Assembly: GCF_022045235.1 (NCBI RefSeq) | Contig: NW_027266330.1 | Coordinates: 45,942,001-46,006,000, forward strand | DNA from: Haliotis cracherodii | Taxonomy: Eukaryota | Direction of reading: 5' to 3' | Length of the DNA stretch: 64,000 bases | Shown: one piece after another, positions 20,751 through 62,772 of the stretch | Numbering within the stretch: the first letter of the stretch is position 1 | Layout: each line of letters begins with the position of its first letter | Notes under the pieces: model-generated | Databases searched by the model: none | The model's input: only the letters and a program-made list of their open reading frames with translations | What the model was told of the DNA's origin: nothing | Translations under genes and position numbers: made by a program

Positions 20751-21639
20751 AGATCAATATCAACCACCTCGTCACGGACACTTATCTCCATTACAATCAA
20801 ACTTTAAAATCCATCTCTGTGGGTTCCAACGAGTTCATATCCAATCAATTGCTATAAAGGGAACAATTAAGTCACTCAAAGCATATTTTATGTCGGTTAA
20901 CCGATAACGACAACTGGATTATACAGGTGCAGGAACAGACATTTTTATCGCATGAAAAAAATCTATACACAGCCGCGGGGTCTAAATGATGCATCTACTT
21001 CCCTGTGCCATGCAACCGTGCTCACGAAAGTAGTGTCTGGTGGTGGAGTGATAGCTTTGTTACAATGTCCCCGTGATCCTGCCTGCATGCCCACCAGGAA
21101 TATAGCCATATACCCCTCACACAGACTGACACCAGTACACAGAGATCGTCAACGATGAGAGCTGGTACCGTTTGAAAATTACGTTCTGCAAAACTTTGTA
21201 AAAACTATATAATATAATATAACTGACCTTGAAGTAATTTGTCATTTCGAATCAGACCAACTGTGCCAACGAATGACAATGCGTCGATCACTTCAATGAC
21301 GTACCCAACAATCGCTCTCTGTTGTGCATTGAGCGTTTGCATTTTACGTCATGACAGTCCCGTAAAGCAAGAGGGTGTCTTGTGTGGAGTACTTATTGAC
21401 AAACGTGGTGATGAACGTTTCAGATGAAACAACACTGAATACGTGAAATATTCCTTAAGGTGACAGGAACAAACAGGGAGTGATGCGAAAACAATGATGG
21501 AATTCAGGTTGTAGGTAGCTTAAGAGTCTCACATTTTGTCCTTGTTTATATATTGAGCAGCATGACTGAATATATAATACAGTTCACATATTCCGTCCAT
21601 ATTTTCAAAATGGTCATGCAGCCACAATATGGACGGTTG

Positions 21640-24610
21640 ATAAAGACAGTCCGGATACAGCCAGAATATAGACCGTCCGGATACAGCCAGAATATAGACA
21701 GTCAGGATACAGTACCAATTGAAACAGTCTGGATTCAGTCAGAATACAGACAGTCCGGAAACCGTAGCAATGGAGACAGTCCGGAGTGTCAGAATAAAGA
21801 CTGTCAGGATACAGACGGTCAGGATACAGACAGAATACAGACGGTCAGGATACAGGCAGAATACAGACGGTCAGGATACAGCCAGAATACAGACGGTCAG
21901 GATACAGCCAGAATACAGACGGTCAGGATACAGGCAGAATACAGACTGTCAGGATACAGGCAGAATACAGACGGTCAGAATACAGCCAGAATACAGACGG
22001 TCAGGATACAGGCAGAATACAGACGGTCAGGATACAGACGGTCAGGATACAGGCAGAATACAGACGGTCAGGATACAGACGGTCAGGATACAGCCAGAAT
22101 ACAGACGGTCAGAATACAGCCAGAATACAGACGGTCAGGATACAGGCAGAATACAGACGGTCAGGATACAGACGGTCAGGATACAGGCAGAATACAGACG
22201 GTCAGGATACAGACGGTCAGGATACAGGCAGAATACAGACGGTCAGAATACAGCCAGAATACAGACGGTCAGGATACAGCCAGAATACAGACGGTCAGGA
22301 TACAGGCAGAATACAGACGGTCAGGATACAGGCAGAATACAGACGGTCAGGATACAGCCAGAAGACAGACGGTCAGGATACAGCCAGAATACAGACGGTC
22401 AGGATACAGACGGTCAGGATACAGGCAGAAGACAGACGGTCAGGATACAGACAGAAGACAGACGGTCAGGATACAACCAGAAGACAGACGGTCAGGATAC
22501 AGACGGTCAGGATACAGACAGAAGACAGACGGTCAGGATACAACCAGAAGACAGACGGTCAGGATACAGCCAGAATACAGACGGTCAGGATACAGCCAGA
22601 AGACAGACGGTCAGGATACAGACGGTCAGGATACAACCAGAATACAGACGGTCAGGATACAGACAGAAGACAGACGGTCAGGATACAGACGGTCAGGATA
22701 CAACCAGAATACAGACAGTCAGGATACAGACAGAAGACAGACGGTCAGGATACAGACGGTCAGGATACAACCAGAATACAGACGGTCAGGATACAGCCAG
22801 AATACAGACGGTCGGGATACAACCAGAAGACAGACGGTCAGGATACAGACGGTCAGGATACAGACAGAAGACAGACGGTCAGGATACAACCAGAAGACAG
22901 ACGGTCAGGATACAGACGGTCAGGATACAACCAGAAGACAGACGGTCGGGATACAGACAGAATACAGACGGTCAGGATACAGCCAGAATACAGACGGTCG
23001 GGATACCACCAGTAGACAGACGGTCGGGATACAGACAGAAGACAGACGGTCGGGATACAGACAGAATACAGACGGTCGGGATACAGACAGAATACAGACG
23101 GTCGGGATACAGACAGAAGACAGACGGTCAGGATACAGACGGTCAGGATACAACCGGAAGACAGACGGTCAGGATACAACCAGAAGACAGACGGTCGGGA
23201 TACAAACAGAATACAGACGGTCGGGATACAGACAGAATACAGACGGTCGGGATACAGACAGAAGACAGACGGTTAGGATACAGACAGAAGACAGACGGTC
23301 AGGATACAGACGGTCAGGATACAACCAGAAGACAGACGGTCGGGATACAGACAGAATACAGACGGTTGGGATACACTCAGAATACAGACGGTCGGGATAC
23401 AGACAGAATACAGACGGTTGGGATACAACCAGAAGACAGACGGTTAGGATACAACCAGAAGACAAATTCAGAATAAAGACAGTCCGGACACAGACAGTCC
23501 GGACACAGACAGTCCGGACATAATCAGAAGACAGACATTTGGTTGTACAACCAGAATACAGACAGTCAGGATACAGACAGTCCCGACACAGCCCGAATAC
23601 AGACAGTCCGGACACCGTAGCAATGGAGACAGTCCGGAGTGTCAGAATAAAGACTGTCAGAATACAAGCCAGAATACAGACGGTCGGGATACAGACAGAA
23701 GACAGACGGTCAGGATACAGTCAGAATACAGACGGTCGGGATACAGACAGAAGACAGACGGTCAGGATACAGACGGTCAGGATACAACCAGAAGACAGAC
23801 GGTCAGGATACAACCAGAAGACAGACGGTCAGGATACAGACGGTCAGGATACAACCAGAATACAGACGGTCAGGATACAGACAGAAGACAGACGGTCAGG
23901 ATACAGACGGTTAGGATACAACCAGAAGACAGACGGTCGGGATACAGACATAATACAGACGGTCAGGATACATCCAGAATACAGACGGTCGGGATACAAC
24001 CAGAAGACAGACGGTCAGGATACAACCAGAAGACAGACGGTCAGGATACAACCAGAAGACAGACTGTCAGGATACAACCAGAATACAGACGGTCAGGATA
24101 CAACCAGAAGACAGACGGTCGGGATACAGACAGAATACAGACGGTCGGGATACAGACAGAATACAGACGGTCAGGATACAGACAGAAGACAGACGGCCAG
24201 GATACAGACGGTCAGGATACAACCAGAAGACAGACGGTCGGGATACAACCAGAAGACAGACTGTCGGGATACAGACAGAATACAGACGGTTGGGATACAG
24301 ACAGAATACAGACGGTCGGGATACAGACAGAATACAGACGGTCAGGATACAGACAGAATACAGACGGTTGGGATACAACCAGAAGACAGACGGTTAGGAT
24401 ACAACCAGAAGACAAATTCAGAATAAAGACAGTCCGGACACAGACAGTCCGGACACAGACAGTCCGGACATAATCAGAAGACAGACATTTGGTTGTACAA
24501 CCAGAATACAGACAGTCAGGATACAGACAGTCCCGACACAGCCCGAAAATAGACAGTCCGGACATAATCAGAACACAGACATTTGGTTTACAGTCAGAAT
24601 ACAGACAGAC
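21640..24610. repeat. ACAGACGGTCAGGAT-based compound satellite with block duplications
   Basis: Mixed short and long units. Diverged block duplicated 950 bp apart (23539 vs 24489). The GTAGCAATGGAGACAG marker occurs near 21764 and 23617. Confidence 0.95.
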
Positions 24611-32694: not shown

Positions 32695-35435
32695 ACAATG
32701 CTACAAGTAGAACACGTCCGGCAATACCACAGGTAGAACACGTCGGCCAATAATACTACAGGTAGAACACACTGGGCAATACGACAGGTAGAACACGTCG
32801 GGCAATACTACAGATAGAACACGTCGGACAATGCTACAAGTAGAACACATTGAACAATACTACAAGTAGAACACTTTGGGCAATACTACAGATAGAACAC
32901 GTCGGACAATGCTACAGGTAGAACACGTTGGGCAATACCACAGGTAGAACACATTGGGCAATACTACAGTAAGAAGACTCGGGCAATGCTAAACTCAGGT
33001 AGAACACATTGGGCAATACTACAGTTAGAACACGTCGGGCAATGCTACAGGTAGAACACGTCGAGAAATGCTATAATTAGAACAAGTTGGACAATGCTAC
33101 AGGTAGAACAAATTGGGCAATACTACAGATATAACACATCGGGCAATACCACAGGTAGAACACGTCGGGCAATGCTACAGGTAGAACACGTCGAGAAATG
33201 CTATAATTAGAACACGTTGAACAATACTACAGGAAGATCACGTCGGGCAATACTACAGGAAGAACACATTGGGCAATGCTAAACTCAGGTAGAACACATT
33301 GGGCAATACTACAGTTAGAACACGTCGGGCAATGCTACAGGTAGAACACGTCGAGAAATGCTATAATTAGAACAAGTTGGACAATACTATAGGAAGAACA
33401 CGTCGGGCAATGCTACAAGTAGAAAACTTTGAGCAATACTACAGATAGAACACGTCGGACAATGCTACAGGTAGAACACGTTGGGCAATACCACAGGTAG
33501 AACACTTTGGGCAATACTACAGATAGAACACGTCGGGCAATTCTATAAGTAGACCACGTTGGGCAATACTACAGGAAGAACACGTTGGGCAATGCTACAG
33601 GGAGAACAAGTTGGGCAATACTACAGATAGAACACGTCGGGCAATACTACAGATAAAACACGCCGGGCAATTCTATAAGTAGAACACGTAGGGCAATGCT
33701 ACAGGGAGAACACGTCAGGCAATACTACAGATAGAACAAGTAGGGCAATGCTACAGGGAGAACACGTTGGGAAATTCTATAAGTAGAATACATAGGGCAA
33801 TACTACAGGTAGAACACGTGGTGCAATTCTACAGGTAGAACACGTGGTACAATACTACAGGTAGAACACGTTGGGCAATGCTACTGGTTGAACACGTCGG
33901 GTAATGATACAGACAGGACACGTCGGGTAATACTACAGCTAGAACACGTCGGGCAATACTATAGACAGAACACGTCGGGCAATACTAAAGGTAGAACACG
34001 TCGGACAATGCTACAGACAGGACACGTCGGAAATGCTACAGACACAACACGTTGGGCAAGACCACAGGTAGAACACGTTGGGCAATACTACAGATAGAAC
34101 ACATCGGACAATGCTACAGGTAGAACACGTCGGGCAATACTACAGAAAGAACACGTTGGGCAATACTACAGGAAGATCACGTCGGGCAATACTACAGGAA
34201 GAACACGTCGGGCAATACTTCAGGAAGGACACGTCGGGCAATACTACAGGAAGAACACGTCGGACAATGCTACAGCTAGAAGACGTCGGACAATGCTACA
34301 GACAGGACACGTCGGGCAATACCACAGGTAGAACACGTTGGGCAATACAACAGATAGAACACTTTGGGCAATACTACAGGAAGAACACACTGGGCAATGC
34401 TACAGGGAGAACACACTGGGCAATGCTACAGATAGAACACGTCGGACAATGCTACAGACAGGACACGTCGGACAATGCTACAGACAGGACACGTCGGACA
34501 ATGCTACAGCTAGAACACGTCGGACAATGCTACAGACAGGACACGTTGGGCAATACCACAGGTAGAACACGTTGGGCAATACTACAGATAGAACACGTCG
34601 GGCAATGCTCCAAGTAGAACACTTTGGGCAATACTACAGGAAGAACACACTGGGCAATACTACAGGAAGATCACGTCGGGCAATACTACAGGAAGAACAC
34701 GTCGGGCAATACTTCAGGAAGGACACGTCGGGCAATACTACAGGAAGAACACGTCGGACAATGCTACAGCTAGAAGACGTCGGACAATGCTACAGACAGG
34801 ACACGTCGGGCAATACCACAGGTAGAACACGTTGGGCAATACAACAGATAGAACACTTTGGGCAATACTACAGGAAGAACACACTGGGCAATGCTACAGG
34901 GAGAACACACTGGGCAATGCTACAGATAGAACACGTCGGACAATGCTACAGACAGGACACGTCGGACAATGCTACAGACAGGACACGTCGGACAATGCTA
35001 CAGCTAGAACACGTCGGACAATGCTACAGACAGGACACGTTGGGCAATACCACAGGTAGAACACGTTGGGCAATACTACAGATAGAACACGTCGGGCAAT
35101 GCTCCAAGTAGAACACTTTGGGCAATACTACAGGAAGAACACACTGGGCAATGCTAAACTCAAGTAGAACACGTTGGGCAATACCACAGGTAGAACGCGT
35201 TGGGCAATACTACAGTTAGAACACGCCGGGCAATGCTACAGGTAGAACACGTCGGGAAATGCTATAAGTAGAACACGTTGGGCAATACCACAGGTAGAAC
35301 GCGTTGGGCAATACTACAGCTAGAACACGTTGGACAATACGACAGGTAGAACACGTCGGGCAATACTACAGCTAGAACACGTCGGGCAATGCTACAAGTA
35401 GAACACGTTGGGCAATACTACATGTGGAACACGTC
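32695..35435. repeat. 26-bp minisatellite (GTAGAACACGTCGGGCAATACTACAG) with a 494-bp (19-mer) duplication
   Basis: Near-identical ORF translations offset by 494 bp (34078/34572, 34338/34832). Confidence 0.96.
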
Positions 35436-35614
35436 AGCTTGTGTAATCTGACCTGGATCCGGCAAACAAATGATCGATGAAGTGAACATCGATGCACGAC
35501 ATACGATGACATACTGAAAAAGCCAAGTCAAAAACAAGGGTCATTGCCAGTGAGGACAGACCTTATCACACGTCTTCTGACGACCAACACCTTACTCTGA
35601 TGACAATAATGCTA

Positions 35615-35852
35615 CGCTTAAGAAAATCATGTTACACTTAAGACAATCATGCTACACTTAAGACAATCATGCTACACTTAAGACAATCATGTTACACTTA
35701 AGACAATCATGTTACATTTAAGACAATCATGCTACACTTAAGACAATCATGTTACATTTAAGACAATCATGCTACACTTAAGACAATCATGCTACACTTA
35801 AGACAATCATGTTACATTTAAGACAATCATGCTACACTTAAGACAATCATGT
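35615..35852. repeat. 20-bp minisatellite (TAAGACAATCATGYTACAYT)
   Basis: About 12 units. Confidence 0.96.
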
Positions 35853-36534
35853 AAGTTAATTTGCAAGCACATGGTTCACTGATGACAAGCATTTTAGCCT
35901 GACGACAATTATTTAACTCAAAAGACATTTATGTTGGTCTAACGACATGCATACCACTCTGGAGACAATCATATCCGTATAACGACAAATGACAACCATG
36001 TCACTTTAAGGTGGCACGTGGTCCTGTGTACAGCGCACAGATCACAAATCGGTTTTGGTTAAGCAACGCTGGCCGTCGACAGTAGATGGATTCGGCAGCT
36101 TGACTCCTGAGAGTTTCTAGGGCTTCGGTCAAGCCACACACTGAAGCACATTTTGCACTTGTGGTGTCTCCCAAAGCAGGTGACTTTGTTCGAAATATGC
36201 ATATGTTCACCCAGCACTGAATAGGTACCCGGTCGAGTGAGATGGTAATGTGACTGTTAACCTTCTGACACCTTCCAGGCAGCAGGGAATTGAGAATCAG
36301 AGTGCACACTGATCCATTGAACGGAGTAATAATGTAGCGCTTTGAGCATGCTTTAGGGTATCGATCTGGCATTAAATTACATCACAAGGGAGAGAGTTTA
36401 CATTACATCAGTCTGACGACAATCAATATAATTCTAAAGACATTTTTTGTTCACTCTTATGACTCAAACTGTAACGGTTATACAATTCACACTTAAAAGA
36501 AGCATGCTACTGTAAAGATAGACCAGATAGCGTA

Positions 36535-37180
36535 AACGACAAATATGTTATTAAGGATGTTCATCTGGCGATAAACTTGTTATTAAGCATGTGGATCTTT
36601 CGACAGGCACGTTATTTAGCATGTGGATCTGGGGACAAGTATGTTATTAAGGATGTGGATCTGGTGACAAACATGTTATTTAGCATGTGGATCTGGTGAC
36701 AAACATGTTATTTAGCATGTGGATCTGGTGACAAGCATGTTATTGAGTATGTGGATCTGGTGACAAACATGATGTTAAGCATGTGGTTCTGGCGGCAGGC
36801 ATGTTTTTAAGCGTGTGGATCTTTCGACAGGCATGTTATTAAGCATGTAGATCTTTCGATGGGCATGCTATTAAACATGTGGATCTTGCGACAAGCATGT
36901 TATTAAACAGGTGGATCTGGCGACAAACATGTTATTAAGGATGTGGATCTTTCGACGAGCATGTTCTTAAGCATGTGGATCTGGTGACAAGCATGTTATT
37001 AAGCATGTTGATCTGGCGAACAGCATGTTATTGAGGATGTGGACCTGGCGACCAGCATGTTATTAAGCATGTGGATCTGGCGATAAGCATGTTATTATGG
37101 ATGTGAATCTGGCTATAAGCATGTTATTAAGCATGTGGATCTTGTGACAAGCATGTTATTAAGCTTGTGGATCGGCAGGC
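36535..37180. repeat. 32-bp minisatellite (TGTGGATCTGGTGACAAGCATGTTATTAAGCA)
   Basis: Period 32 (36621, 36653). Confidence 0.94.
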
Positions 37181-40049: not shown

Positions 40050-41450
40050 GAATATACAAGGGAAATATATGTGGAGAGTGTCAGACATACAAGAAGGGGG
40101 GAAATATATGCGGGAAACAATCAGACATACTAAGAAGAGGGAAATATATGTGGGAGAGCGCGAGACATAATAGAAAGAGGGAAATATATTTGGGAGATTG
40201 TCAGACATTCTAGGAAGAGTGAAATATAGGACATACTGTCCGACATACTGGAAAGGGGAAATTTCTGAGGAGAGGTTCACATATGCTGGAAAGGGGGAAA
40301 TATATAGGAGAGGGTCAGACATTCTGGAGATGGGGAAACATCTGAGGAGAATGGCAGACATACTGGTGGAAATAGGGAAATATATGCAAGAGAGTGTCAG
40401 ATATACTAGAAAGGGGGAAATATCTGAGGAGAGTGTCAGTCATACTGGAAAGAAGGAAATATATGTGGAAGATTTCAGACATACTAGGAAGAAGGAAATA
40501 TATGTGGGAAATTGTCAGACATACTAGGAACAGTGAACTATAGGAGCGAGTTTGTCAGACATATTGGAAAGGGGAAATATCTGAAGAGAGGTTCAGATAT
40601 ACTGGAAAGGGGGAAATATATGGAGAAGAGTGTCAGACATACGAGAAAGGGGGAAATATATGTTGGAGAGGGACATACATTCTGGAAAGGGGGAAATATC
40701 TGAGAAGAATGGCAGACATACTGGTGGAAATAGGGAAATATATGTAAGAGAGTGTCAGATATACTAGAAATGGGGAAATATCTGAGGAGAGTCTCAGTCA
40801 TACTGTGTAGGGGAAATAGCAGAGGAGAGCGCGAGACATACTAGAAAGAGGGAAATATATGTGGAAGATTTCAGACATACTAGGAAGAAGGAAATATAGG
40901 AGCGAGTTTGTCAGACATATTGGAAAGGGGAAATATCTGAAGAGAGGTTCAGATATACTGGAAAGGGGGAAATATATGGAGGAGAGTGTCAGACATACGA
41001 GAAAGGGGGAAATATATGTTGGAGAGGGACAGACATTCTGGAAAGGGGGAAATATCTGAGAAGAATGGCAGACATACTGGTGGAAAGGGGGAAATATATG
41101 TAAGAGAGTGTCAGATATACTAAAAATGGGGAATATCAGACATTCTGGAAAGGGGATATATCTGAGGAGAGGGTCAGACATACTGGAAAGGGGAAATATC
41201 TGAGGAGAGGGTCAGACATTCTGGAAAGGGGATATATCTGAGGAGAGGGTCAGACATACTGTAAAGGGGAAATATCTGAGGAGAGGGTCAGACATACTGG
41301 ACAGGGGATATATCTGAGGAGAGGGTCAGACAAACTGGAAGGGGAAGTATCTGAGGACAGGGTCAGACATACTGGAAAGGGGAAATATCTGAGGAGAGGG
41401 TCAGACATTCTGGAAAGGGGAAATACAGGAGCAAGAATTGTCAGACACAC
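40050..41450. repeat. 38-41-bp purine-rich minisatellite (TCAGACATACTGGAAAGGGGAAATATCTGAGGAGAGGG) with a ~356-bp higher-order repeat
   Basis: TAGGAGCGAGTTTGTCAGAC at 40541 and 40897, homogeneous 38-mers at 41150-41420. Confidence 0.93.
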
Positions 41451-42204
41451 TATATGAATTACAGGAACTTTATGAAGATCAGGTACACGATCGGGGAGTC
41501 TAGTAAACTCTGAAAAATGAGGGACGGATAATAACAAGCGTAAAATGTATTCAACATAGAGAGGCACGTGGAAATAGAAATATCATACAGATAGCGAACC
41601 ACATAGAGATAAGACAGCTGTATGTCTAAAAAAATACTTCATTTTGATATGTTTTATTAATCCTTGTTACAAAAAAGGGCGTGGAGTATGAGATTTAGAG
41701 TAGTAGAACCTTGAGTTCTGGTTCCGCCCACTTGTTGATACCGTGGCAGTGAATGTGATACAGAGCCCGTCCACCAGCAACTACCAGCCTGCCATGTCAA
41801 GACATTCCAGTGTCTGGGAAATATGGGACCTTCAACGACCTGAAATATGGACATATGTTTGCGTCTTAATTCTCAGCAAGATGGCTCCGGGAGCCCGTCA
41901 GCCCATTTTTTTCTGTCCTTGGGCACGCCTGTAAGTAAACTGTAAACACTTAAAGGGTTAACACTGATCAGCAACAGCATGTGCTGGGTGACACACCGAG
42001 TCATATGTGAATAAAACATGAGAGACGACGGGGAAAAAGCACGCTGTCGAGCAACACAGTTGCTTTGATTACACCACAGCCGCTTACTTGAAGGGCTGCG
42101 TTTCTGTTTCACGATCAACAGTTTGTTTTAGTTACTTTCGGAAAGCTTCATTTTCTGTAAGAATATGAATTAGTCTGTGCTGGTTCTTCTCACACAAGCA
42201 ACCA

Positions 42205-44015
42205 TTATACGGCTACTTCATGCCACATCGACTGTCTACCCGCAATATGGTACTTCATGCCACCCCGACTGTCTACCCGCGATATGGTACTTCATGCCAC
42301 ATCGACTGTCTACCCGCAATATGGCTACTTCATGACACACCGACTGTCTACCCACATCGACTGTCTACCTGCGATATGGCTACTTTGTGACACATCGACT
42401 GTCTGCCCACATCGACTGTCTACCCACATCGACTGTCTACCCGCGATATGGCTACTTTGTGACACATCGACTGTCTACCCGCGATATGGCTACTTCATGA
42501 CACATCGACTGTCTACCCGCAATATGGCTACTTCATGACACATCGACTGTCTACCCGCATTATGGTACTTCATGCCACATCGACTGTCTACCCGCATTAT
42601 TGCTACTTCATGACACATCGACTGTCTACCCACGATATGGCTATTTCATGACACACCGACTGTCTACCCGCAATATGCTTCTTCATGACACATCGACTGT
42701 CTATCCGCAATATGGCTACTTCATGACACATCGACTGTCTACCCGCAATATGGTTACTTCATGACACACTGACTGTCTACCCGCAATATGGCTACTTCAT
42801 GACACATCGACTGTCTACCCGCAATATGGTTACTTCATGACACATCGACTGTCTACCTGCGATATGGCTACTTCATGACACATCGACTGTCTACCTGCGA
42901 TATGGCTACCTCATGACACATCGACTGTCTATCCGCAATATGGCTACTTCATGACACATCGACTGTTTACCCGCGATATGGCTACTTTATGACACATCGA
43001 CTGTCTAACTGCGATATGGCTACTTCATGACACATCGACTGTCTACCCACAATATGGTACTTCATTCCACATCGACTGTCTACCCGCAATATGGCTACTT
43101 CATGACACATCGACTGACTACCCACGATATGGCTATTTCATGACACACCGACTGTCTACCCGCAATATGCTTCTTCATGACACATCGACTGTCTACCCGC
43201 AATATGGCTACTTCATGACACATCGACTGTCTACCCGCAATATGGTTACTTCATGACACACTGACTGTCTACCCGCAATATGGCTACCTCATGATACATC
43301 GACTGTCTACCCGCAATATGGTTACTTCATGACACATCGACTGTCTACCTGCGATATGGCTACTTCATGACACATCGACTGTCTACCTGCGATATGGCTA
43401 CCTCATGACACATCGACTGTCTATCCGCAATATGGCTACTTCATGACACATCGACTGTCTACCCACATCGACTGTTTACCCGCGATATGGCTACTTTATG
43501 ACACATCGACCGTCTAACTGCGATATGGCTACTTTATGACACATCGACTGTCTACCCGAGATATGGCTACTTCATGACACATCGACTGTCTACCCGCAAT
43601 ATGTCTACTTCATGACACACCGACTGTCTACCCGCGATATGGCTACTTCATGACACATCGACTGTCTCCCCGCAATAAGGCTACTTCATGACACACCGAC
43701 TGTCTACCCACATCGACTGTCAACCCTGCGATAATGCTACTTTATGACACATCGACTGTCTACCCGCGATATGGCTACTTGATGACACATCGACTGTCTT
43801 CCCGCGATATGGCTACTTCATGACACATCGACTGTCTACCCACATCGACTGTCTACCCGAGATATGGTTACTTCATGACACATCGACTGTCTATCCGCAA
43901 TATGGCTACTTCATGACACATCGACTGTCTACCCACATCGACTGTCTACCCGCGATATGGCTACTTTATGACACATCGACTGTCTACCCGCATTATGGCT
44001 ACTTCATGACACACA
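42205..44015. repeat. 38-bp minisatellite (TATGGCTACTTCATGACACATCGACTGTCTACCCGCAA)
   Basis: Period 38 with occasional short internal units, grading into a degenerate related array to about 44215. Confidence 0.96.
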
Positions 44016-44578
44016 CATTCGTCATACTCCGGCTACTAGTCAGGTGGAAACTGTATTCTTCTCACACACGGCTACTAGACACGTGGATCCTATATTCTTC
44101 TTACACACGCTACTAGACACATTGATACTGTATTCTTCTGACACACGGCTATTGGATACGTGGATACTGTATTCTTCTTACACACGGAAACTAGACACGT
44201 GAATACTGTAGTCTTTGCATACATCAAAAGTCCATACATACATCCCATCCCATCCAGTGCTTAGGTTATAGCCTGTTCTGACACAAACACAGCTCTTTCA
44301 TGCACAGATTTCCGTATCCCAATCCAAATTTAAAGCCAATTTTAGATTGCCATCACCACAATAGACGAGTTATTGCATTATCTCTGTTGAGTGTCACGTT
44401 GACATGACGTCGTGAAAATCAATGCGTGGAAGTTTGGCCTTATGAGGCATGGTGTTACCATTTAGACGCTGGGGACACCAGGTGACCAGGTGTCCAACAG
44501 CATCCCGCATAGGCATGTAGTACCAGGCATAGACACGTGTTTGATCAGGGATTGAACTGTACCACGCATAGAAACGTA

Positions 44579-48261: not shown

Positions 48262-49300
48262 ACGTCTGTTGTCTGATCGAGCGTGGCGTCCTTTGGTATC
48301 TGGTCAAGTTGTCGCATCTGTTATCTGGTCTAGCGTCGTGGCGGCTTCTATTGTCTGGTCTGACGTCATGGCGGCTTCTATTGTCTGGTCGAGCGTCGTG
48401 GTGGCTTCAGTTGTCTGGTCGAGCGTCGTGCCGGCTTCTATTGTCTGGCGGAGGGTCGAAGTGGCCTCTGGTGTGTGGTTGACTGTGATGGCGGTTTCTG
48501 GTGTCTTGTTGGGCATTGTGGCGGCTTCTGGTGTCTGTTTGAGCATCGCGGCGTCCTGTTGTATCTGGTGAGTGTTGTGGCGGCTTCTGTTATCTGGCTG
48601 AGCGTCGTGGCAGCGTCTTGTGTCTGTTTGAGCGTCGTGGTGGCTTCTGTTGTGTGGCCTAGCGTCGTGGTGGATTCTGTTGTCTGGCCTAGCGTCGTGG
48701 TGGCTTCTGTTGTCTGGCCTAGTGTCGTGGTGGCTTCTGTTGTCTGGCCTAGCGTCGTGGCGGCTTCTGGTGTCTTGCTGAGCGTCGAAGTAGCCTCTTG
48801 TGTGTGGTTCAGCGTTGTGGCGGCTTCCGGTGCCTGGTTGAGCGTCGTGGCGACCAATGGTATCTGATGAGAGTTGTTGCAGCTTCTGTTGTCTGGTTGA
48901 GCGACGTGGTGGTGTCTGTTGTCGGGGCTAGCGTCGTGGCTGCTTCTGAATTTGGACAAGCGTCATGGCGGCTTCTGACGTCTGGTGAGTGTTGTGGCGG
49001 CTTCTGTGATCTGGTCTAGCGTCGTGGTGGCTTCTACTGTCTGGCTGGGGATCGAAGTAGCTTCTGGTGCCTGGTGAAGCGTCGTGGCGCCTACTGGTGT
49101 CTGGTAAAGTGTCGCGGTGGCTTCTGTTGTCTGGTCAAGCGTCGTGGCGTCCAATGGTATCTGGTGAGTGTTGTAGAAGTTTTAGTTGTCTTGCTGAGCG
49201 TCGTGGTTCCTTCCGGTGCATGGTCAAGCGTGATGGCGGCTTCTGTTGTCTGGTTGAGTGTTGAAGAAGCCGTTGCTGTCTGGCCAAGTGTCTGGAGTAT
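48262..49300 (-). repeat. Diverged 30-bp minisatellite reading as mucin-like TEATTTLDQT on the minus strand
   Basis: 10-codon units with recurrent 29-nt units that shift the frame. Confidence 0.88.
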
Positions 49301-52277: not shown

Positions 52278-53690
52278 TATATGTGAATTGATGAATAACA
52301 ACCCTCGGTTGTCACCTGCTTGATGCAGTTTTTCCTCATTCTTAAAAGCCCTGACACAATAATATTTTAACTCTACATTTCGAATGATACTTTTAATTAT
52401 AAACTGAAGACCTTGTGCATGATATACCAAGATTGTATTGCAAAACCGGTGTGTTAGAACACTGGTCCTCAGTAGGGATTTAAGGTTAGGCTTGGTCCTT
52501 AGGAACCTATGCCGTCACTGATGCTGAATATATAGCTTAAATATTGCTTAGTGAGGCATTAAACAACAAAAAACATTTTTTTTATCTATCTTGACTCAGT
52601 GTAATTCCACGGATCACTGAGTGGTTTTACTAATTGTGAAGTACTTCCTTACGTGGATTGACACTTATTCTACTTCTAAACAAATGCTCACACAATTTCG
52701 GGTTGATCTAACGAAAGATGTTTTTTTTCATCATTGTGAAGAATAGCGTCATCCAGCGGTCTTCTCGGGTATTGATAACCAGGGTCAACATCGTGGACAC
52801 TGTGAGTGATCAAATTTATTGCACCTTATCGTAGGTCGATCATTGTGACCCACTGGAAGTATAACACTATAAGTAGCTTGTGTCAGCATCAGTGAACATA
52901 AGTCATGAATAATTAACATGTCTTTTTAATTGATAAAAGTAACACTTTTCAATAGTTTAATTTCTCCTTTTTTCAAATGTATTTTCTTGGAGTTGTCACT
53001 CATATTTACAATATTGACGTCGAGAAAATAAGGGATATGCAATGCTACAGTATGGACGTCATGGTTCTTGTGCAAATGTTAAGCTTTATTTTATTTCCCA
53101 TGATCTGGCGACATGACGGTCATATTCATGTTGGTGTGTTCTAACAGGATGCTGCTTCTAAATGGTGACAACTGTATGGATTGCTCAATGCACAGCTGTG
53201 CGATAATACTGCATCACGTGAAGAGCAGGTTTTTTTCCGAGAAACGGATGTAAATAACGAGTCACGATCCCGACTACCTGCATTTCATTTGTCATGTTAA
53301 ATAACCGTGATGATGAGTTTATCACTTTATTGAGGAACCAGTTCACTATAAATGTTGGTTGGTCGGAGCACTATTTCCAGTACCCCAGGCAACTGTCGTC
53401 GGAATTCTACAGAGAACACCAGATCCGGTAAGTACTGATTGCACGGATGATATTTACAGAACAACTTTATTTACACTCAGGCCGGAATATACACAGAAGA
53501 TAGTGGGATGGTTTAGGCGGAAGATTTTACAGTTTTCAAAATGATATTACAGAGGTTTCCTTATAACATTTATTATTTAACAATTAAAAAGTTCTATAAA
53601 TTTAAGCATTTTTTGGTTTCTAAAATATGAATTTTGAACAAGTATGTTCCGTTGGTGTTTTAAACGAGGACAACAACGTGCTTGCATTTT

Positions 53691-53853
53691 TAGTGTGTGA
53701 GTTTGATTTTACGCCGCTTTTAGCAATATTCCAGCAATATCCCGGCGGGGGACACCAGAAATGGGCTTCACACATTGTACCCATGTCGGGAATCAAACCC
53801 TGGTCTTCGGCGTGACGAGCGAACATTTAACCATTAGGCTACCCGACCGCCCC
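53691..53853 (-). mobile_element. SINE family B copy
   Basis: Full family sequence with an 11-bp TSD GCTTGC(A/G)TTTT. Confidence 0.9.
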
Positions 53854-54825
53854 GCTTGCGTTTTAAAAACGATTGTGGCATTGATTGGGATAACACGCAT
53901 GTCTTTATAGGAAGGAGCTCTGTATAATTTGTCGCGAAAAAAATCTTAAATTTTTTTTTATTATGCTTCAGACTGTTAAAAATATAATGCTCACCACATT
54001 CAAGTATTCAAGCACATGATTGTTAAAAAAAACTGTCTGGGATTGCTGTCGTAGCTGAAAAATATCTAATCTCGGTACAAAACCCCAGGATGGATGCTCC
54101 AGTTCTGCCATCAGTGGTCCCTTCGAAGTGTGACATTGTTCTCGAAGGTGCTTGTTTATGAATGAGCGTACTCGTGAACTTTCTATGTATCTAACCTCAC
54201 TTTCGCTTGGTCAGAAACGATAGAAAATCCACTCGTTTCGTAGAAATGTCTCTTGCGGGACAAAGTGTAATATTCCCTCTCTCGACACAACATTATCGAC
54301 GTGGTCAAACAGTGAGACCAGTTCAGCTCATCGACAGTAGCGGACGGATTGCACGGCTATTCGCGGTGACGACAATGGCCGCCGTATCACCAGCGACTAC
54401 GTCGGCGATAGATAATCGCCGTCAGCCTGAGTGTAAGTGACAGAGCGAGTCCCATCACCGGGAACATTGGCGACTCGGTCCCGGCATGGGTTCTGTCACG
54501 TGATTGTCAACCTGAGCCTTTTCAACCTTTATTCTCCCATCTAACTGGCTGTTGTCGCCTATAACTTCAGCCCAACCGAGAATAAACGCGTGATCTTGGA
54601 CCTACATAGCGACCGTTGTTATTCTACATGTATGCAGCCATCGATGTTGAAGGTCAGACTAAGTCAAATAGGGAAGATGTTTGAAGATTCAGATGTTGGC
54701 TGATAAAATAAATATTCAGTACCCCACTTCTAGACGAATTGCTACCTAATAGCTATTACATGATGTAAGCATTCAAACGTCAAGATACAAAATCGATGTT
54801 TGTGATTATTTGTATTGCAGGTACA

Positions 54826-54909
54826 ATGGAATCTATTGCCGTCATCCTATGTGTGCTGTCTTTGATAATGACTTTGAGCCCAAGCCTTAGTGGAGCGGCG
54901 ACCATCAAG
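54826..54909 (+). CDS. Coding exon A of a small secreted Cys-rich protein (FGFBP-like): signal peptide MESIAVILCVLSLIMTLSPSLSGAATIK
   Basis: Acceptor ttatttgtattgcAG ends at 54820. ATG at 54826 in acaATGg context, 28 codons with a hydrophobic core and small residues (SGA/AA) at a plausible cleavage site. Phase-0 donor AAG|GTATTG at 54909/54910. Confidence 0.82.
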
Positions 54910-55222
54910 GTATTGATTCAATAACATTTAGCACAATATTTTATATGTATGGTCAACAGTAGTTATGCGTTCCCCGTGCCAGGAGCCACTGGCCGTTTGT
55001 CCCAACAGCAGTTCTTCATCGATTACGATCCTAGGTCTGTGCGAAACCTTTCCAGTCACTCAAAAACCTTCGCCCGTTAGCTCCATCCGAGTGTTAACGT
55101 CTTTGAAATGTAACCCATCTCGTTTTCATGCCACATTAAGCTGCCACACTCTAATTGTAATTAACCATCGTTGTTAAACCCTTTCCACTATCTCACTGTT
55201 ACGTTTATACTCGTCATTGGAC

Positions 55223-55488
55223 GTGAAGATCCGGGGTAGAATAGGTCTTCAGCAACCCATGCTTGCCGTAGAAGGCGACTATGCTTGTCGTAAGAGGCGA
55301 CTAACGGGATCGGTTGGTCAGAATCGCTGACTTTGTTGATGCATGTCATCGATCCCAATTGCGTGGATCGATGCTCATGATAATAATCACTGGATTGTCA
55401 GGTCCAAACTCGATTATTTACAGACCGCCGTCATATAGATGGAATATTTCTGTGTGCGGCGTTAAACAACAAACCAACTAACCAAGCA
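55223..55488 (+). mobile_element. Family A copy inside the intron of the FGFBP-like gene
   Basis: Best-preserved copy, flanked by a degenerate TSD actcgtcattggac / acttgtcctggac. Confidence 0.88.
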
Positions 55489-55522
55489 ACTTGTCCTGGA
55501 CAATCTCCCTCCTTTCACACAG

Positions 55523-55822
55523 GGCACAATAAAGGTCGGGGACGTCTCATGTAGCTATGCGGAGATCAAATACAACTCTGGTGGTGGACCCCGAGGATTG
55601 CGTCTCTTCAGCTGCAAGAACAACGGCGGCAACATGAACCTTGACTGCTACTACTACCCCGACAATCCACACGACTGCGCTTGGTACAATAAAAACCAGT
55701 CTCAATACTATAAACTTCTGGCAAAAAGTGCTATGAATAATGGCCAGCCATGCCGTATGGGAAACATTTCTGAAAGAAAATGTCACAAGACCTACCCATG
55801 CGAGAAAGGAAACTGTATGTGA
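55523..55822 (+). CDS. Terminal coding exon B of the FGFBP-like secreted protein (GTIKVGDVSCSYAEI...CHKTYPCEKGNCM*); spliced product 127 aa
   Basis: Pyrimidine tract and acceptor tctccctcctttcacacAG ending 55522, phase 0 matching exon A. 99 open codons plus TGA, 8 Cys in the mature chain, sequons NQS and NIS, AATAAA about 45 nt after the stop. Confidence 0.87.
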   Translation, partial: GTIKVGDVSCSYAEIKYNSGGGPRGLRLFSCKNNGGNMNLDCYYYPDNPHDCAWYNKNQSQYYKLLAKSAMNNGQPCRMGNISERKCHKTYPCEKGNCM

Positions 55823-55865
55823 GATGTAAAATGAATTCATGATTCCAAACTTCTTCTTACATCAG

Positions 55866-55871
55866 AAATAA
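55866..55871 (+). terminator. Polyadenylation signal AATAAA of the FGFBP-like gene
   Basis: Canonical hexamer shortly after the stop codon, followed by a GT-rich element (ctgttgtgtc) about 25 nt downstream. Confidence 0.65.
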
Positions 55872-55991
55872 ATGCTCGACAACAAGACTAATCCTGTTGT
55901 GTCATCATATATCGTAGAATCATGCTGTACACATGTTTGTATAGAAATGTATCACTGAACACTGAGTGTTGAACTACTTCATGTCAGTGAA

Positions 55992-56120
55992 AGTGAGTAA
56001 GTTGGGTTGTATGCCGCTTTAAGTAATATTCAAGCACTATCATGGCGGGGGACTCCAGAAATGGGAATCGACACCTGGTCTTCGGTCTGAGGAGCCAGCA
56101 CCTCAGCCACTTGGCTACCT
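55992..56120 (-). mobile_element. SINE family B, internally deleted copy
   Basis: Tail and head present, part of the body missing. Confidence 0.75.
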
Positions 56121-56464
56121 CAGAATAAAAATATGTCTTCAGAAAAGTATCGACTTTGACCAAAGTACAGCGTAAAAGAAATATAATATAATTTTAAAAT
56201 GTGACCTATTTTAGCACTTGGTCGGTAGGATTGTTTTCTATAGTTTTGGCGTCCACGAGAGTTTGGACTGTACAAATCCTCTTCTTCATGTACAATGCTG
56301 TGATATTGCTGGGATATTTCTACAATTGTCAGTTACTCTGTTCTCTGTGGTTATTTCTTAACCGTATCCCCTGCCGTGAAACAGTAAACACAGCCATGTT
56401 ATAACACAGGGATTCATAACCGCATGCTTACAAAACGAGAGTTGGAGAAGCAGCTCGCTTAGCA

Positions 56465-59904: not shown

Positions 59905-60150
59905 TAGCATGGCTGAATGTACCGCCGTCTTAGCAGCAGACGGCGACACGAGAGAGACGTCTCATGTTTGTGACGTGACCCTGCTACTAGCATGGCTGAA
60001 TTTACCGCCGTTTTAGCAGCAGACGGCGACACGAGAGAGACGTCTCATGTTTGTGATGTGACCCTGCTACTAGCATGGCTGAATTTACCGCCGTTTTAGC
60101 AGCAGACGGCGACACGAGAGAGACGGCTCATGTTTGTGATGTGACCCTGC
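59905..60150. repeat. 83-bp tandem repeat x3 with an internal hairpin
   Basis: TAGCATGGCTGAAT at 59905, 59988 and 60071. Confidence 0.95.
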
Positions 60151-60680
60151 CACAGTGGTTCGTGTGTTTTACTTCATTGTGTGTGTGTTCTTAAATAAAT
60201 TTCATCAGGTTCGGTAAGCTGTTGTTCTGATATCGAACGTATACAATATTCTATTGGGTTATCGGCCGCCACTGTTATATGCATCGATGTGAAGGCTGTC
60301 GATAAATTGATGTCCTCTTACGCACGTTTTTTGTGTGAAAATTTAAAAGAGGTATCAGTAAAGAGGTATTGGCCAGAATCAAGCATTCTTCTATGTCATG
60401 GTAAAATTCTTTATAACCCAGTGGGAACCCGGATTAAAATAGATCCCTAGGACGCTCTCATAAGAGGTGGTCTGGCTTGAAGGTGCTCGATTAATCAAGA
60501 TCGAAGCACCCGTCGTGGAAGCTGGCTTCGATCGGGTGGTCTCACTTGGTCTCGCAGTAGGTTTTACTTGTAACTGTCCAGCTGTATAGTTACTTCTTAG
60601 ATAATCCTATGTATCCCGAACCAAGAGGCATTGTTTCTTTGAGAGGCATATAGAAGTTGAAGTACGAAATAAGGATAAGA

Positions 60681-60739
60681 GGTGAGGTGAAATGGGGTTT
60701 AACGTCGCGTCAAAGATTATTGCACTTATATGGCGACGC

Positions 60740-60770
<31 letters not shown>

Positions 60771-61024
60771 GCTTTTTGTACAAGTCCGAACTGATGCCGA
60801 TTTGATGCACACTGAGATACCGTACCGCAGTTTAACATGAATACCCCACTTAGACACAGTATACAAGCCGACCTGTCCTTGTTTAGCCCCTTAATGCCGA
60901 GCGCCAGACAGGGTAACAACAAGTACCACATTTTAACGTCTTTTGGTATGACGCGGCCGGGAATCGAACCTCGGATCTTCCGCTCTCCGGGCGGACGCTC
61001 CACCATTTGACCACGGAGGCGGTC
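60681..61024 (-). mobile_element. tRNA-derived SINE family C with a Meta/MESC-like central domain
   Basis: Revcomp has A box GTGGTCAAATGG and B box GGTTCGATTCC, then GTCATACCAAAAGACGTTAAAATGTGGTACTTGTTGTTACCCTGTCTGGCGCTCGGCATTAAGGG, which resembles the Meta/MESC SINE core as I recall it. Internal (CA)n, tail ending GCGACGTTAAAC, and GGATAAGA repeated at both flanks. Confidence 0.85.
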
Positions 61025-61026
61025 TA

Positions 61027-61187
61027 GTAGGGATAAGATATATGGATGAACAACATCCTTATTACAATTAGGAGCGACGTTTCCTTGTAGCTTCTAACAC
61101 ATGCTTGATAACAGTGTCAGAACCAACAACGAAACTTCACTCCTAATTGTAATAAGGATGTTGTTTTTCCATATATCTTATCCTTAC
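61027..61187. mobile_element. Palindromic Penelope-like (pseudo-LTR) remnant
   Basis: About 70-bp inverted arms around CTTGATAA. Each arm reads ..GTGT(T/C)AGAA..GAAAC..CTCCTAATTGTAATAAGGATGTTGTT outward. A single-arm relative lies at 48180-48240. Confidence 0.6.
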
Positions 61188-61372
61188 CAAGAAGCACTGG
61201 TATTCATTCTGAAATCCATTTGAATTATGTTGTTCTCTAGCTTCCCCGGGTATGTTTTCCATGTATTCAATTCCTGTTGGGGATCCGGGGTAACGAACCT
61301 GTTCCAAATAACCATTACTTATGAGTGTAGGCTAAAATTAGTCGGGTGGTCAGGCTCTGTGATACCCGAATC

Positions 61373-62772
61373 ACCCTGTAGTGGGTACAGGTTGAGGTAA
61401 CAGTCACCTGTAGGGAGTACAAGATGAGGTAACGGTCACCTGTAGGGAGTACATGATGAGGTAACGGTCACCTGTAGGGAGTACAAAATGAGGTAACAGT
61501 CACCTGTAGTGGGTACAGGTTGAGGTAACGGACACCTGTAGCGAGTACAAGATGAGGTAATGGACACCTGTAGGGAGTACAGGATGAGGTAACAGTCACC
61601 TGTAGGGAGTACAAGATGAGGTAACGGTCACCTGTAGGGAGTACATGATGAGGTAACGGTCACCTGTAGGGAGTACAAAATGAGGTAACGGTCACCTGTA
61701 GGAAGTACAAGATGAGGTAACGGTCACCTGTAGGGAGTACAAGATGAGGTAACGGTCACCTGTAGGGAGTACATGATGAGGTAACAGTCACCTGTAGGGA
61801 GTACAGGATGAGGTAACAGTCACCTGTAGGGAGTACAGGATGAGGTAACGGTCACCTGTAGGGAGTACAAGATGAGGTAACGGTCACCTGTAGGAAGAAC
61901 AAGATGAGGTAACGGTCACCTGTAGGGAGTACAGGATGAGGTAACAGTCACCTGTAGGGAGTACAAGATGAGGTAACGGTCACCTGTAGGGAGTACAGGA
62001 TGAGGTAACGGTCATCTGTAGGGAGTACAAGATGAGGTAACGGACACCTGTAGGGAGTACAGGATGAGGTAACGGTCACCTGTAGGGAGTACAAGATGAG
62101 GTAACGGTCACCTGTAGGGAGTACAGGATGAGGTAACGGTCACCTGTAGGGAGTACAAGATAAGGTAACGGACACCTGTAGGGAGTACAGGATGAGGTAA
62201 CGGTCACCTGTAGGGAGTACAAGATGAGGTAACGGTCACCTGTAGGGAGTACAAGATGAGGTAACGGTCACCTGTAGGGAGTACAGGATGAGGTAACGGA
62301 CACCTGTAGGGAGTACAAAATGAGGTAACGGTCACCTGTAGGGAGTACAAGATGAGGTAACGGTCACCTGTAGGGAGTACAAAATAAGGTAACAGTCACC
62401 TGTAGGGAGTACAGGATGAGGTAACAGTCACCTGTAGGGAGTACAAAATGAGGTAACGGTCACCTGTAGGGAGTACAAGATGAGGTAACGGTCATCTGTA
62501 GGGAGTACAAGATAAGGTAACGGACATCTGTAGGAAGTACAAGATGAGGTAACGGTCACCTGTAGGGAGTACAAGATGAGGTAACGGTCACCTGTAGGGA
62601 GTACAGGATGAGGTAACAGTCACCTGTAGGGAGTACAGGTTGAGGTAACAGTCACCTGTAGGGAGTACAAGATGATGTAACGGTCACCTGTAGGGAGTAC
62701 AAGATGAGGTAACGGTCACCTGTAGGGAGTACAAGATGAGGTAACGGTCACCTGTAGGGAGTACAAGATGAG
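61373..62772. repeat. 32-bp minisatellite (GATGAGGTAACGGTCACCTGTAGGGAGTACAA)
   Basis: About 43 highly homogeneous units. Confidence 0.97.

What the first reader, a model, noticed from the sequence alone, without database searches (positions are those of the whole stretch)
54826..55822. Spliced gene for a compact invertebrate FGF-binding-protein-like secreted protein
Seen: splicing two phase-0 exons gives MESIAVILCVLSLIMTLSPSLSGAATIKGTIKVGDVSCSYAEIKYNSGGGPRGLRLFSCKNNGGNMNLDCYYYPDNPHDCAWYNKNQSQYYKLLAKSAMNNGQPCRMGNISERKCHKTYPCEKGNCM (127 aa). Mature Cys lie at 38, 59, 70, 80, 105, 115, 121 and 126 (C-x20-C-x10-C-x9-C-x24-C-x9-C-x5-C-x4-C). From memory, the vertebrate FGFBP1 N-terminal domain has C-x16-C-x8-C-x8-C-x23-C-x11-C with motifs KG..C.W, C.F.GNP..C, YWKQ.A and C.K.FP. 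These line up with KG..CSY, CYYYPDNPHDC, YYKLLA and CHKTYP here. Inference: a stand-alone FGFBP N-domain protein lacking the linker and C-terminal FGF-binding module of vertebrate FGFBPs and carrying an extra C-terminal Cys pair. It may therefore have another role (glycan or matrix binding, mucus, shell or defence). The ORF track shows only its last 74 aa.
Basis: partly seen in the sequence, partly recalled or inferred. Interest (0 to 1): 0.8.

Follow-up and report, generated by a model that had tools for sequence, protein, structure and literature searches.

The report
Abalone nacre protein, FGFBP-like domain
This is a real, spliced black-abalone gene for a small secreted cysteine-rich protein related to the front half of vertebrate FGF-binding proteins; its greenlip-abalone counterpart was already found in mother-of-pearl, so it is a sound but fairly ordinary addition to a known kind.

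Summary
The exons 54826-54909 and 55523-55822 join through a GT..AG intron. Spliced contigs from four public runs show the junction. So does the RefSeq model of this same genome, XP_071085925.1, Haliotis cracherodii, "uncharacterized protein".

The FGFBP reading also holds, by transitive evidence. The protein itself scores below the Pfam FGF-BP1 cut-off (15.2 bits against 25; the H. rubra orthologue scores 23.8). A profile of the abalone family finds compact 100-200 aa proteins of brachiopod, limpet, bivalves and a springtail. Eight of ten of those tested pass the cut-off, always on profile positions about 40-126 of 228. hhalign links the two sets at 99.5% probability (E 6e-23) with six cysteines aligned. 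The abalone clade adds a C-terminal cysteine pair and lacks the C-terminal FGF-binding half.

- The H. laevigata orthologue is an accepted, minor, "uncharacterized" nacre matrix protein with two MS peptides (Mann 2018).
- A compact FGFBP-like nacre protein, HcN13, was reported from a freshwater mussel in 2025.

New here:
- the link between that abalone nacre protein and the FGF-BP1 family;
- a confident AlphaFold model (pLDDT 94) with no neighbour among solved structures;
- KDEL-type tails on the paralogues.

The mechanism, polyanion or matrix binding rather than FGF carriage, is inferred.

The parts
53352..53427 (+). Upstream exon (5' UTR, or an alternative N-terminal extension of 25 codons plus 1 nt). 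Its ATG at 53352 is in weak context (T at -3, T at +4). The donor GT is at 53428.
   Evidence: tblastn of the P0001 N-terminus gives 100% identity over 26 aa. Sequence and splice sites were read. Contigs of X1 and X8 carry 126 and 28 further letters upstream of the next exon. The true 5' end was not determined.
53428..54820 (+). Intron 1 (GTAAGT...GCAG). It is spliced out in runs X1 and X8. Contigs of X4 and X5 instead run unspliced from at least 54302 into the next exon, so this is either retention or an internal start.
54821..54909 (+). Signal-peptide exon. The conserved start ATG at 54826 is in strong context (ACAATGG). The exon encodes MESIAVILCVLSLIMTLSPSLSGAATIK.
   Evidence: In H. laevigata the upstream frame is closed by a stop.
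54826..54897 (+). Predicted signal peptide of 24 aa, with cleavage after ...SGA. Mean Kyte-Doolittle hydropathy of residues 4-17 is 2.99.
   Evidence: Mann 2018 Table S2 gives a signal peptide at aa 1-22 for the H. laevigata orthologue, which is 2 residues shorter and has the same site. No SignalP tool was available.
54910..55522 (+). Intron 2, 613 nt, phase 0, GT..AG. It holds a highly repeated SINE-like element at about 55222-55490.
Evidence: The joint was seen in 4 of 4 runs. Repeat depth is 1e5-1e6.
55523..55822 (+). Coding part of the last exon: the 99-aa FGF-BP1-like N-domain with 8 Cys, N-glycosylation sequons at NQS (58) and NIS (81), pI 8.9, and stop TGA at 55820-55822.
55823..55885 (+). 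Short 3' UTR with AATAAA at 55867-55872. Contigs of X1 and X8 end at 55885 and 55875. The X4 contig runs on past 56300, giving a longer form.

Best explanation
This is a three-exon gene of the black abalone, Haliotis cracherodii. It makes a mature secreted protein of about 103 aa that is basic (pI about 9) and disulfide-locked. The protein is a stand-alone copy of the N-terminal cysteine domain of the FGF-binding-protein family (Pfam FGF-BP1).

Shown:
- the gene and its splicing;
- orthologues in five other abalone species and one paralogue 5.85 Mb away;
- homology to compact FGF-BP1-domain proteins of other invertebrates;
- absence of the C-terminal half that carries FGF binding in vertebrates;
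- physical presence of the greenlip-abalone orthologue in nacre matrix.

Inferred:
- After signal-peptide cleavage the protein is released, probably by the mantle among other tissues, into the extrapallial space.
- There it binds polyanionic partners through the part that corresponds to the heparin-binding half of FGFBP1. Candidate partners are sulfated or acidic glycans, acidic matrix proteins and possibly the mineral surface.
- It is then occluded in nacre as a minor matrix component, in the way reported for the mussel homologue HcN13. It is not expected to ferry FGF.
For: Gene and junction.

Orthologues and paralogue. The intron sits just before the GT(I/K) residues in both the window gene and the paralogue L002.

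Homology:
- FGF-BP1 is the only Pfam hit for exon 2 and three orthologues.
- The profile search gave 29 relatives at E<=1e-3 in 1.84e9 proteins.
- 18 of 25 aligned sequences (the window's exon 2 plus 24 of those relatives) hit FGF-BP1 at E<=0.01, and 8 of 10 relatives tested pass the curated cut-off. Precomputed PF06473 tags agree.
- hhalign gives 99.5% probability.
- BLASTP gives 36% identity to a unionid-mussel member (E 8e-11) and 44% to Lottia V4A983.

Fold: the AlphaFold2 model has pLDDT 93.8 and pTM 0.85, one compact beta-sheet plus helix domain covering all 99 residues.

Nacre: Mann et al. 2018 (PMC6003135) Table S2 lists Tri_128009/comp71699 as an accepted nacre protein. It is called "Uncharacterized", has a signal peptide, pI 9.0, best match V4A983_LOTGI and 0.020% iBAQ, with peptides GTIVVGQVTCSYAEIK and NQENYYNLLAK. 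The first peptide starts at the first residue of the second exon and follows a Lys, as the spliced model predicts.

Mechanism background, all from review PMC13732962:
- KLK6 cleavage at Lys149-Leu150 removes the heparin-binding domain.
- HcN13 is an FGFBP homologue linked to shell formation.
Against: - The window protein itself is below the Pfam cut-off (15.2 bits), and no vertebrate FGFBP sequence could be aligned directly.
- Nacre presence is shown for H. laevigata, not for this species. It is minor (0.02% iBAQ) and rests on two peptides.
- One of the two H. laevigata transcripts comes from a hemolymph and tentacle library, so expression is not mantle-specific and occlusion in shell could be incidental.
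- No binding partner has been tested for any invertebrate member in the sources I could read. The HcN13 paper itself is not held.
- The tissue of the RNA runs is hidden behind coded names.
Confidence: 0.68

Rival explanations
1. It is a true growth-factor carrier. The compact domain binds abalone FGF, or another heparin-binding factor, in hemolymph or extrapallial fluid and regulates mantle cell signalling. Nacre merely stores or traps it, as proposed for the IGFBP-like nacre protein perlustrin.
For: - It belongs by homology to the FGF-BP1 family.
- Perlustrin, with an IGFBP domain, sits in the same nacre table.
- The review notes that the predicted FGFBP2-FGF2 interface is central rather than C-terminal.
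Against: The protein ends at about profile position 126 of 228, so it lacks the C-terminal domain to which FGF binding of FGFBP1 and FGFBP3 is mapped. No FGF-binding data exist for any stand-alone N-domain.
Confidence: 0.12
2. It is a hemolymph or epithelial defence or mucus protein, for example microbe or glycan binding, that gets into shell only as a contaminant of extrapallial fluid.
For: - The H. laevigata transcript comp71699 comes from the hemolymph and tentacle transcriptome.
- Abundance in nacre is very low, 0.02%.
- It is a small, basic, Cys-rich secreted protein. The language-model atlas places the H. rubra orthologue nearest tick salivary 8-Cys proteins, though with scores below 0.9, which the tool rates as leads only.
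Against: - It was found in nacre fractions after several cleaning protocols (three protein-group files).
- A mussel homologue is reported as shell-associated.
- It shows no similarity to known antimicrobial families.
Confidence: 0.15
3. It is an orphan abalone cysteine-rich protein. The FGF-BP1 resemblance is convergence of cysteine spacing and a few motifs.
For: All direct Pfam scores of the abalone proteins are below the curated cut-off. The six-frame FGF-BP1 search of the genome gave only two chance hits and did not return this gene.
Against: - The same family and the same profile region are hit by four abalone sequences.
- The relatives found in an unbiased search of 1.84e9 proteins pass the cut-off.
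- hhalign gives 99.5% probability and E 5.9e-23 over 112 columns, including the non-cysteine motifs GPR, NPH.C..YN..Q..(F/Y)Y..LA.
Confidence: 0.04

Closest known systems
Haliotis laevigata nacre protein Tri_128009 / comp71699 (Mann et al. 2018, Proteome Sci 16:11, Table S2, "Uncharacterized")
   Same: It is the orthologue. It has the same signal peptide, the same 8-Cys domain and the same length class (125 aa), and about 80% of residues are identical by eye over the mature part. Its pI is 9.0. It was detected by two MS peptides in nacre matrix.
   Different: It comes from another species. It was never assigned to a family; its best match was given as Lottia V4A983 at E 1e-4. The link to FGF-BP1 is made here.
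HcN13 of the freshwater mussel Hyriopsis cumingii (Jin et al. 2025, Mar Biotechnol; cited in PMC13732962)
   Same: It is a small molluscan protein reported as an FGFBP homologue associated with shell or nacre formation. Unionid relatives in my set (Sinanodonta P0017 and P0038, Potamilus P0039) are 131-143 aa, pass Pfam FGF-BP1, and are 36% identical to the window protein.
   Different: I could not read the paper or the HcN13 sequence, so the identity of HcN13 with these unionid proteins is assumed. The mussel proteins have six core Cys. The abalone clade has eight and falls below the Pfam cut-off.
Vertebrate FGFBP1, FGFBP2 and FGFBP3 (Pfam PF06473)
   Same: They are secreted and share the N-terminal cysteine-rich region, profile positions about 40-126. 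According to the review, that region lies in the half holding the heparin-binding domain.
   Different: The vertebrate proteins are about twice as long and carry the C-terminal FGF-binding domain, which is absent here. The abalone protein has an extra Cys pair at its C-terminus.
Perlustrin (abalone nacre protein homologous to the N-terminal module of IGF-binding proteins)
   Same: This is an analogy, not homology. It is a compact, stand-alone, Cys-rich N-module of a vertebrate growth-factor-binding protein family found in abalone nacre. It is listed with an IGFBP domain in the same Table S2.
   Different: It belongs to a different fold and family and is much more abundant in nacre (0.3-1.4% iBAQ against 0.02%).

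Membership tests
FGF-BP1 (Pfam PF06473) | Score at or above the curated Pfam cut-off (25 bits) for the protein itself | tested here: not met
   Exon 2 scores 15.2 bits with E 0.019. Orthologues score 13.4, 23.8 and 20.9 bits, and the paralogue gives no hit. This is an operational threshold, not a biological trait. I therefore file the protein as a divergent relative of the N-domain rather than as a Pfam-called member.
FGF-BP1 (Pfam PF06473) | Significant homology to proteins that do pass the cut-off | tested here: met
   The abalone profile finds proteins at E 1e-10 to 4e-4 in 1.84e9 sequences. Eight of ten tested pass with 25.9-38.1 bits. hhalign of abalone against those gives 99.5% probability and E 5.9e-23.
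FGF-BP1 (Pfam PF06473) | Six conserved cysteines of the N-terminal region in conserved register | tested here: met
   C10, C31, C42, C52, C77 and C87 align with the six invariant Cys of the 14 invertebrate members. The register against vertebrate FGFBPs was not tested directly. The disulfide pairing was not testable because no coordinates are given.
FGF-BP1 (Pfam PF06473) | N-terminal signal peptide; secreted | tested here: met
   The N-terminus has a hydrophobic h-region with small residues at -3 and -1. The orthologue was recovered from an extracellular matrix, nacre.
FGF-BP1 (Pfam PF06473) | C-terminal FGF-binding domain (profile positions about 127-228) | tested here: not met
   The protein ends 12 residues after the last matched profile position. 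All hits cover profile positions up to 126 at most.
FGF-BP1 (Pfam PF06473) | Binds heparin and FGF | not testable with these tools
   This needs recombinant protein. Only the net basic charge is known: pI 8.9, 13 K+R against 7 D+E in exon 2.
Molluscan shell (nacre) matrix proteins | Identified by mass spectrometry in cleaned shell matrix | tested here: inconclusive
   This is met for the H. laevigata orthologue: accepted in Table S2, with 2 peptides, in several nacre fractions. No proteome of H. cracherodii was examined. The H. asinina shell-proteome main text has no matching motif.
Molluscan shell (nacre) matrix proteins | Expressed in mantle | tested here: inconclusive
   One H. laevigata/rubra transcript comes from a mantle transcriptome, and another from hemolymph and tentacle. 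The four runs that hold the spliced mRNA are coded, so their tissue is unknown.
ER-resident proteins with KDEL-type retrieval signal | C-terminal [KRHQSA]-[DENQ]-E-L | tested here: not met
   The window protein ends ...EKGNCM. The paralogue L002/P0004 ends KEEL, and other relatives end RDEL, HDEL or KQEL.

The most novel reading that the evidence does not exclude
The FGF-BP1 N-domain is an old bilaterian stand-alone module, found here in brachiopod, gastropods, bivalves and a springtail. It has two cellular fates. Copies with KDEL-type tails (KEEL, RDEL, HDEL, KQEL) would stay in the ER. Tail-less copies, such as this gene, are secreted and were recruited into nacre. On this reading vertebrate FGFBPs arose by adding the FGF-binding C-terminal module to this domain, so FGF binding is a late add-on and the domain's ancestral job, in the ER or on glycans, is still unknown.
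Probability: 0.3. Interest if true: 0.55.

Novelty: new member of a known kind. Interest (0 to 1): 0.36.

Why it matters
The result gives a family name and a confident structural model to an abalone nacre protein that has been listed as "uncharacterized" since 2018. It also shows that compact FGFBP-like proteins occur in the shells of both gastropods and bivalves. That supports the view that stand-alone growth-factor-binding-protein modules, as with perlustrin and IGFBP, recur as minor nacre components.

It further suggests that the heparin-binding half of FGFBPs predates vertebrates as an independent domain. The gene offers a small, easily expressed protein on which to test what that domain binds. 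The practical gain is modest: better annotation of abalone genomes and one more candidate for shell-formation studies in an endangered species.

Tried and rejected
- **Structure searches.** VIA-align against 48,161 chains gave best Z 4.8, which is below the tool's noise level. A PDB sequence search with the family profile gave nothing.
- **Protein atlas.** It was closed for new sequences. On the H. rubra orthologue it returned tick Salp15/ixostatin-like clusters at 0.79-0.89, which the tool rates as leads only. I rejected this as generic small-Cys-rich resemblance.
- **Six-frame PF06473 search of the abalone genome.** It gave two weak hits, L004 and L005 (E 0.28 and 5.6), with no sensible ORFs, so I rejected them as chance.
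- **Word search for vertebrate FGFBPs.** I used an alignment headed by a 198-aa member. Only invertebrate proteins came back.
- **Closed or unavailable sources.** The HcN13 paper is not held.
- **Literature and database searches.** Searches for Lottia 157812/V4A983 and for FGF-BP1 in shell proteomes found nothing further. Rfam found nothing in 53-57 kb.
- **Tree of 33 family members.** It could not decide whether the ER-type tails are ancestral.
- **Joined model.** All searches used exon 2 alone, which holds all but 4 residues of the mature protein. Exon 1 is only the signal peptide and was translated but not searched.

Full report
**What is in the sequence.**
- The stretch 54826-54909 reads MESIAVILCVLSLIMTLSPSLSGAATIK.
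- The stretch 55523-55822 reads 99 residues ending ...CEKGNCM plus TGA.
- Between them lies a 613-nt intron that starts GTATTG and ends in a pyrimidine tract followed by CAG. Both boundaries fall between codons.
- The eight cysteines of the second exon sit at 10, 31, 42, 52, 77, 87, 93 and 98.
- The mechanical ORF list holds only the last 74 codons.

**Is the junction used?** Yes.
- I laid the contigs of four public runs (four coded organisms, four studies) on 54300-56300. Each holds a contig that skips 613 bases with GT..AG ends.
- In X1 and X8 the contig starts at the acceptor just upstream of the ATG and carries 126 and 28 further letters that lie outside the laid stretch. It ends at 55885 and 55875, just after the AATAAA at 55867.
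- In X4 and X5 the contig runs unspliced from at least 54302 into the signal-peptide exon and continues past 56300.
- The runs are labelled only "RNA?", but a contig without the intron can hardly be genomic DNA.
- The collection also holds XP_071085925.1, "uncharacterized protein [Haliotis cracherodii]", 154 aa (P0043). Its residues 28-55 and 56-154 are 100% identical to the two exons. The gene is thus already modelled in RefSeq for this very genome.
- The genome identity follows from this protein, from the paralogue P0004 and from two earlier notes of the scan.

**The 5' end.**
- The RefSeq-type models of H. cracherodii, H. rufescens and H. asinina start 27 codons further up. tblastn places that piece at 53352-53427, with donor GT at 53428 and acceptor AG at 54819-54820.
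- That ATG has a poor context (T at -3 and at +4). The ATG at 54826 has a strong one (ACAATGG).
- The H. rubra model starts at the signal-peptide Met.
- In the H. laevigata transcript the upstream frame is closed by a stop...GNCR*RKSSVKSRSGTMVAVIL....

The long form may or may not be made in some species. If the signal peptide is cleaved, both forms give the same mature protein.

**Relatives.**
- The word search found orthologues in H. rufescens (90%), H. rubra (82%) and H. asinina (78%). With the alignment as query it also found a second abalone clade, 50-58% identical.
- The own-genome search found one paralogue 5.85 Mb downstream on the same chromosome (L002, 57%). Its intron sits at the same place, immediately before the GT(I/K) residues. 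No other convincing copy turned up.
- Because word search and family scan left the family open, I ran the profile of nine abalone sequences against the 1.84-billion-protein library. It gave 29 hits at E<=1e-3, nearly all 90-200 aa.
- Named hits are Lingula anatina, Lottia gigantea V4A983, the unionid mussel Sinanodonta woodiana, the clam Mactra antiquata and the springtail Folsomia candida.

**The FGFBP question.**
- Pfam gives one family only for exon 2: FGF-BP1, E 0.019 and 15.2 bits against a cut-off of 25, on residues 30-89 and profile positions 69-126 of 228.
- The orthologues hit the same region with 13.4, 23.8 and 20.9 bits. The paralogue does not hit. Taken alone this is suggestive, not proof.
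- The relatives found by the abalone profile settle it. In the 25-row alignment (the window's exon 2 plus 24 relatives), 18 hit FGF-BP1 at E<=0.01.
- Of ten relatives scanned singly, eight pass the curated cut-off (38.1, 33.2, 31.2, 30.9, 28.9, 28.3, 27.7 and 25.9 bits), always on profile positions about 40-126. The collection's own precomputed tags agree.
- hhalign of the abalone alignment against 14 of these proteins gives 99.5% probability and E 5.9e-23 over 112 columns. The six core cysteines are in register, as are the motifs GPR, NPH-C, YN..Q..(F/Y)Y..LA.
- Pairwise BLASTP gives 36% identity to the unionid protein and 44% to Lottia V4A983.

The abalone family is therefore a divergent branch of the compact invertebrate FGF-BP1-domain proteins. 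It keeps only the N-terminal part of the vertebrate architecture. The abalone proteins carry one further Cys pair, C93 and C98.

**Structure.**
- With nine sequences AlphaFold gave a poor model (pLDDT 65). With 33 sequences it gave a confident one (pLDDT 93.8, pTM 0.85).
- The fold has four strands, a helix pair at 53-71 and a final hairpin at 81-96 that holds the extra cysteines.
- Neither Foldseek (best E 0.36) nor VIA-align over 48,161 chains (best Z 4.8) finds a solved neighbour. The family profile finds no PDB sequence either.

This domain has no experimental structure so far. Coordinates are not given to me, so the disulfide pairing stays untested.

**What it does.**
- The most telling evidence is published. 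In Mann et al. 2018 (PMC6003135), Additional file 1 holds the H. laevigata transcript comp71699_c0_seq1_1, plainly the orthologue.
- Table S2, the list of accepted nacre proteins, carries [quoted passage not shown]. It lists two peptides and 0.020% iBAQ.
- The entry stands in three nacre protein-group files. The peptides GTIVVGQVTCSYAEIK and NQENYYNLLAK are in three peptide files.
- The first peptide begins at the first residue of the second exon and follows a Lys. That fits the spliced protein and not the unspliced reading, which has Gln there.
- The review PMC13732962 reports that HcN13 of the mussel Hyriopsis cumingii is an FGFBP homologue tied to shell formation. It also says that FGFBPs have a heparin-binding domain separate from the C-terminal FGF-binding domain, the former being removed by cleavage at Lys149-Leu150.

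From this I infer the following. The abalone protein is basic (pI 8.9), has two N-glycosylation sequons and is homologous to the half that holds the heparin-binding part. It most likely binds polyanionic matrix components and is built into nacre as a minor constituent. It is not expected to carry FGF, because the FGF-binding module is missing. I hold the gene, the homology and the secretion as shown, the nacre location as shown for a sister species, and the binding mechanism as inference at about even odds.

**Rivals.**
- A true growth-factor carrier is possible but lacks the mapped binding domain.
- A hemolymph or mucosal defence protein trapped in shell fits the hemolymph and tentacle origin of one transcript and the low abundance.
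- Convergence without homology is now very unlikely.

**Novelty.**
- The gene is annotated, though unnamed.
- The orthologous protein is a known but unnamed nacre component.
- A mollusc FGFBP-like shell protein has been published.

What is new is the bridge between these: the family assignment of the abalone nacre protein, its eight-Cys variant, a confident model of a domain without solved structure, and the observation below.

**Seen in passing.**
- Seven members end in KDEL-type signals: the abalone paralogue clade (KEEL, KEEL, RDEL, DDEL), Lingula (KSEL), an unnamed protein (KQEL) and Mactra (HDEL). The window gene's clade ends GNCM.
- A tree of 33 members places the abalone clades with Lingula (94/95 support). 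It scatters the tails, so it cannot say whether they are ancestral.
- This hints that part of the family works in the ER and that the nacre protein is a tail-less, secreted offshoot.

Noticed in passing
L002:1414-1836 (G000:C67:51846834-51847130) and proteins P0004-P0007, P0009, P0010, P0022: The paralogue clade and several distant family members end in KDEL-type ER-retrieval motifs (KEEL, RDEL, DDEL, KSEL, KQEL, HDEL). The window gene's clade does not. This suggests ER-resident and secreted branches of the compact FGF-BP1-like family. The tree could not decide whether the tails are ancestral.
   Followed up: partly
window 55222-55490 (inside intron 2): A SINE-like repeat shows enormous k-mer depth (1e5-1e6) in all four runs, with many contigs ending at 55222-55224. 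Rfam finds no family there.
   Followed up: partly
window 55975-56108: A second repeated element lies just downstream of the gene, with depth 1.6e3-2.2e4 in all runs against 0-1000 beside it.
   Followed up: no
window 54302-54907: In two of four runs (X4, X5) the spliced contig runs unbroken through the last 500 nt or more of intron 1 into the signal-peptide exon. An in-frame ATG at 54796 would add MFVIICIAGT. This is either intron retention or an internal promoter in those species.
   Followed up: no
window 20001-24414, 32696-37173, 40060-44215, 48317-49258, 59905-62772: The gene lies in a stretch packed with minisatellites of periods 14-93, up to 105 copies. Several produce long pseudo-ORFs, for example the Thr-rich 173-aa ORF at 48438-48959 on the minus strand.
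   Followed up: no
window 55547-55840 (minus strand): A 97-aa ORF runs antisense to the coding exon. Nothing supports it, so it is most likely a by-product of the codon composition of the real gene.
   Followed up: no
P0035 / P0008 (H. rufescens LOC124152614): H. rufescens has a third abalone paralogue clade, ending ...GNCLLSTI, about 55-59% identical to the window protein by alignment. The own-genome search finds no separate copy of it in H. cracherodii.
   Followed up: partly
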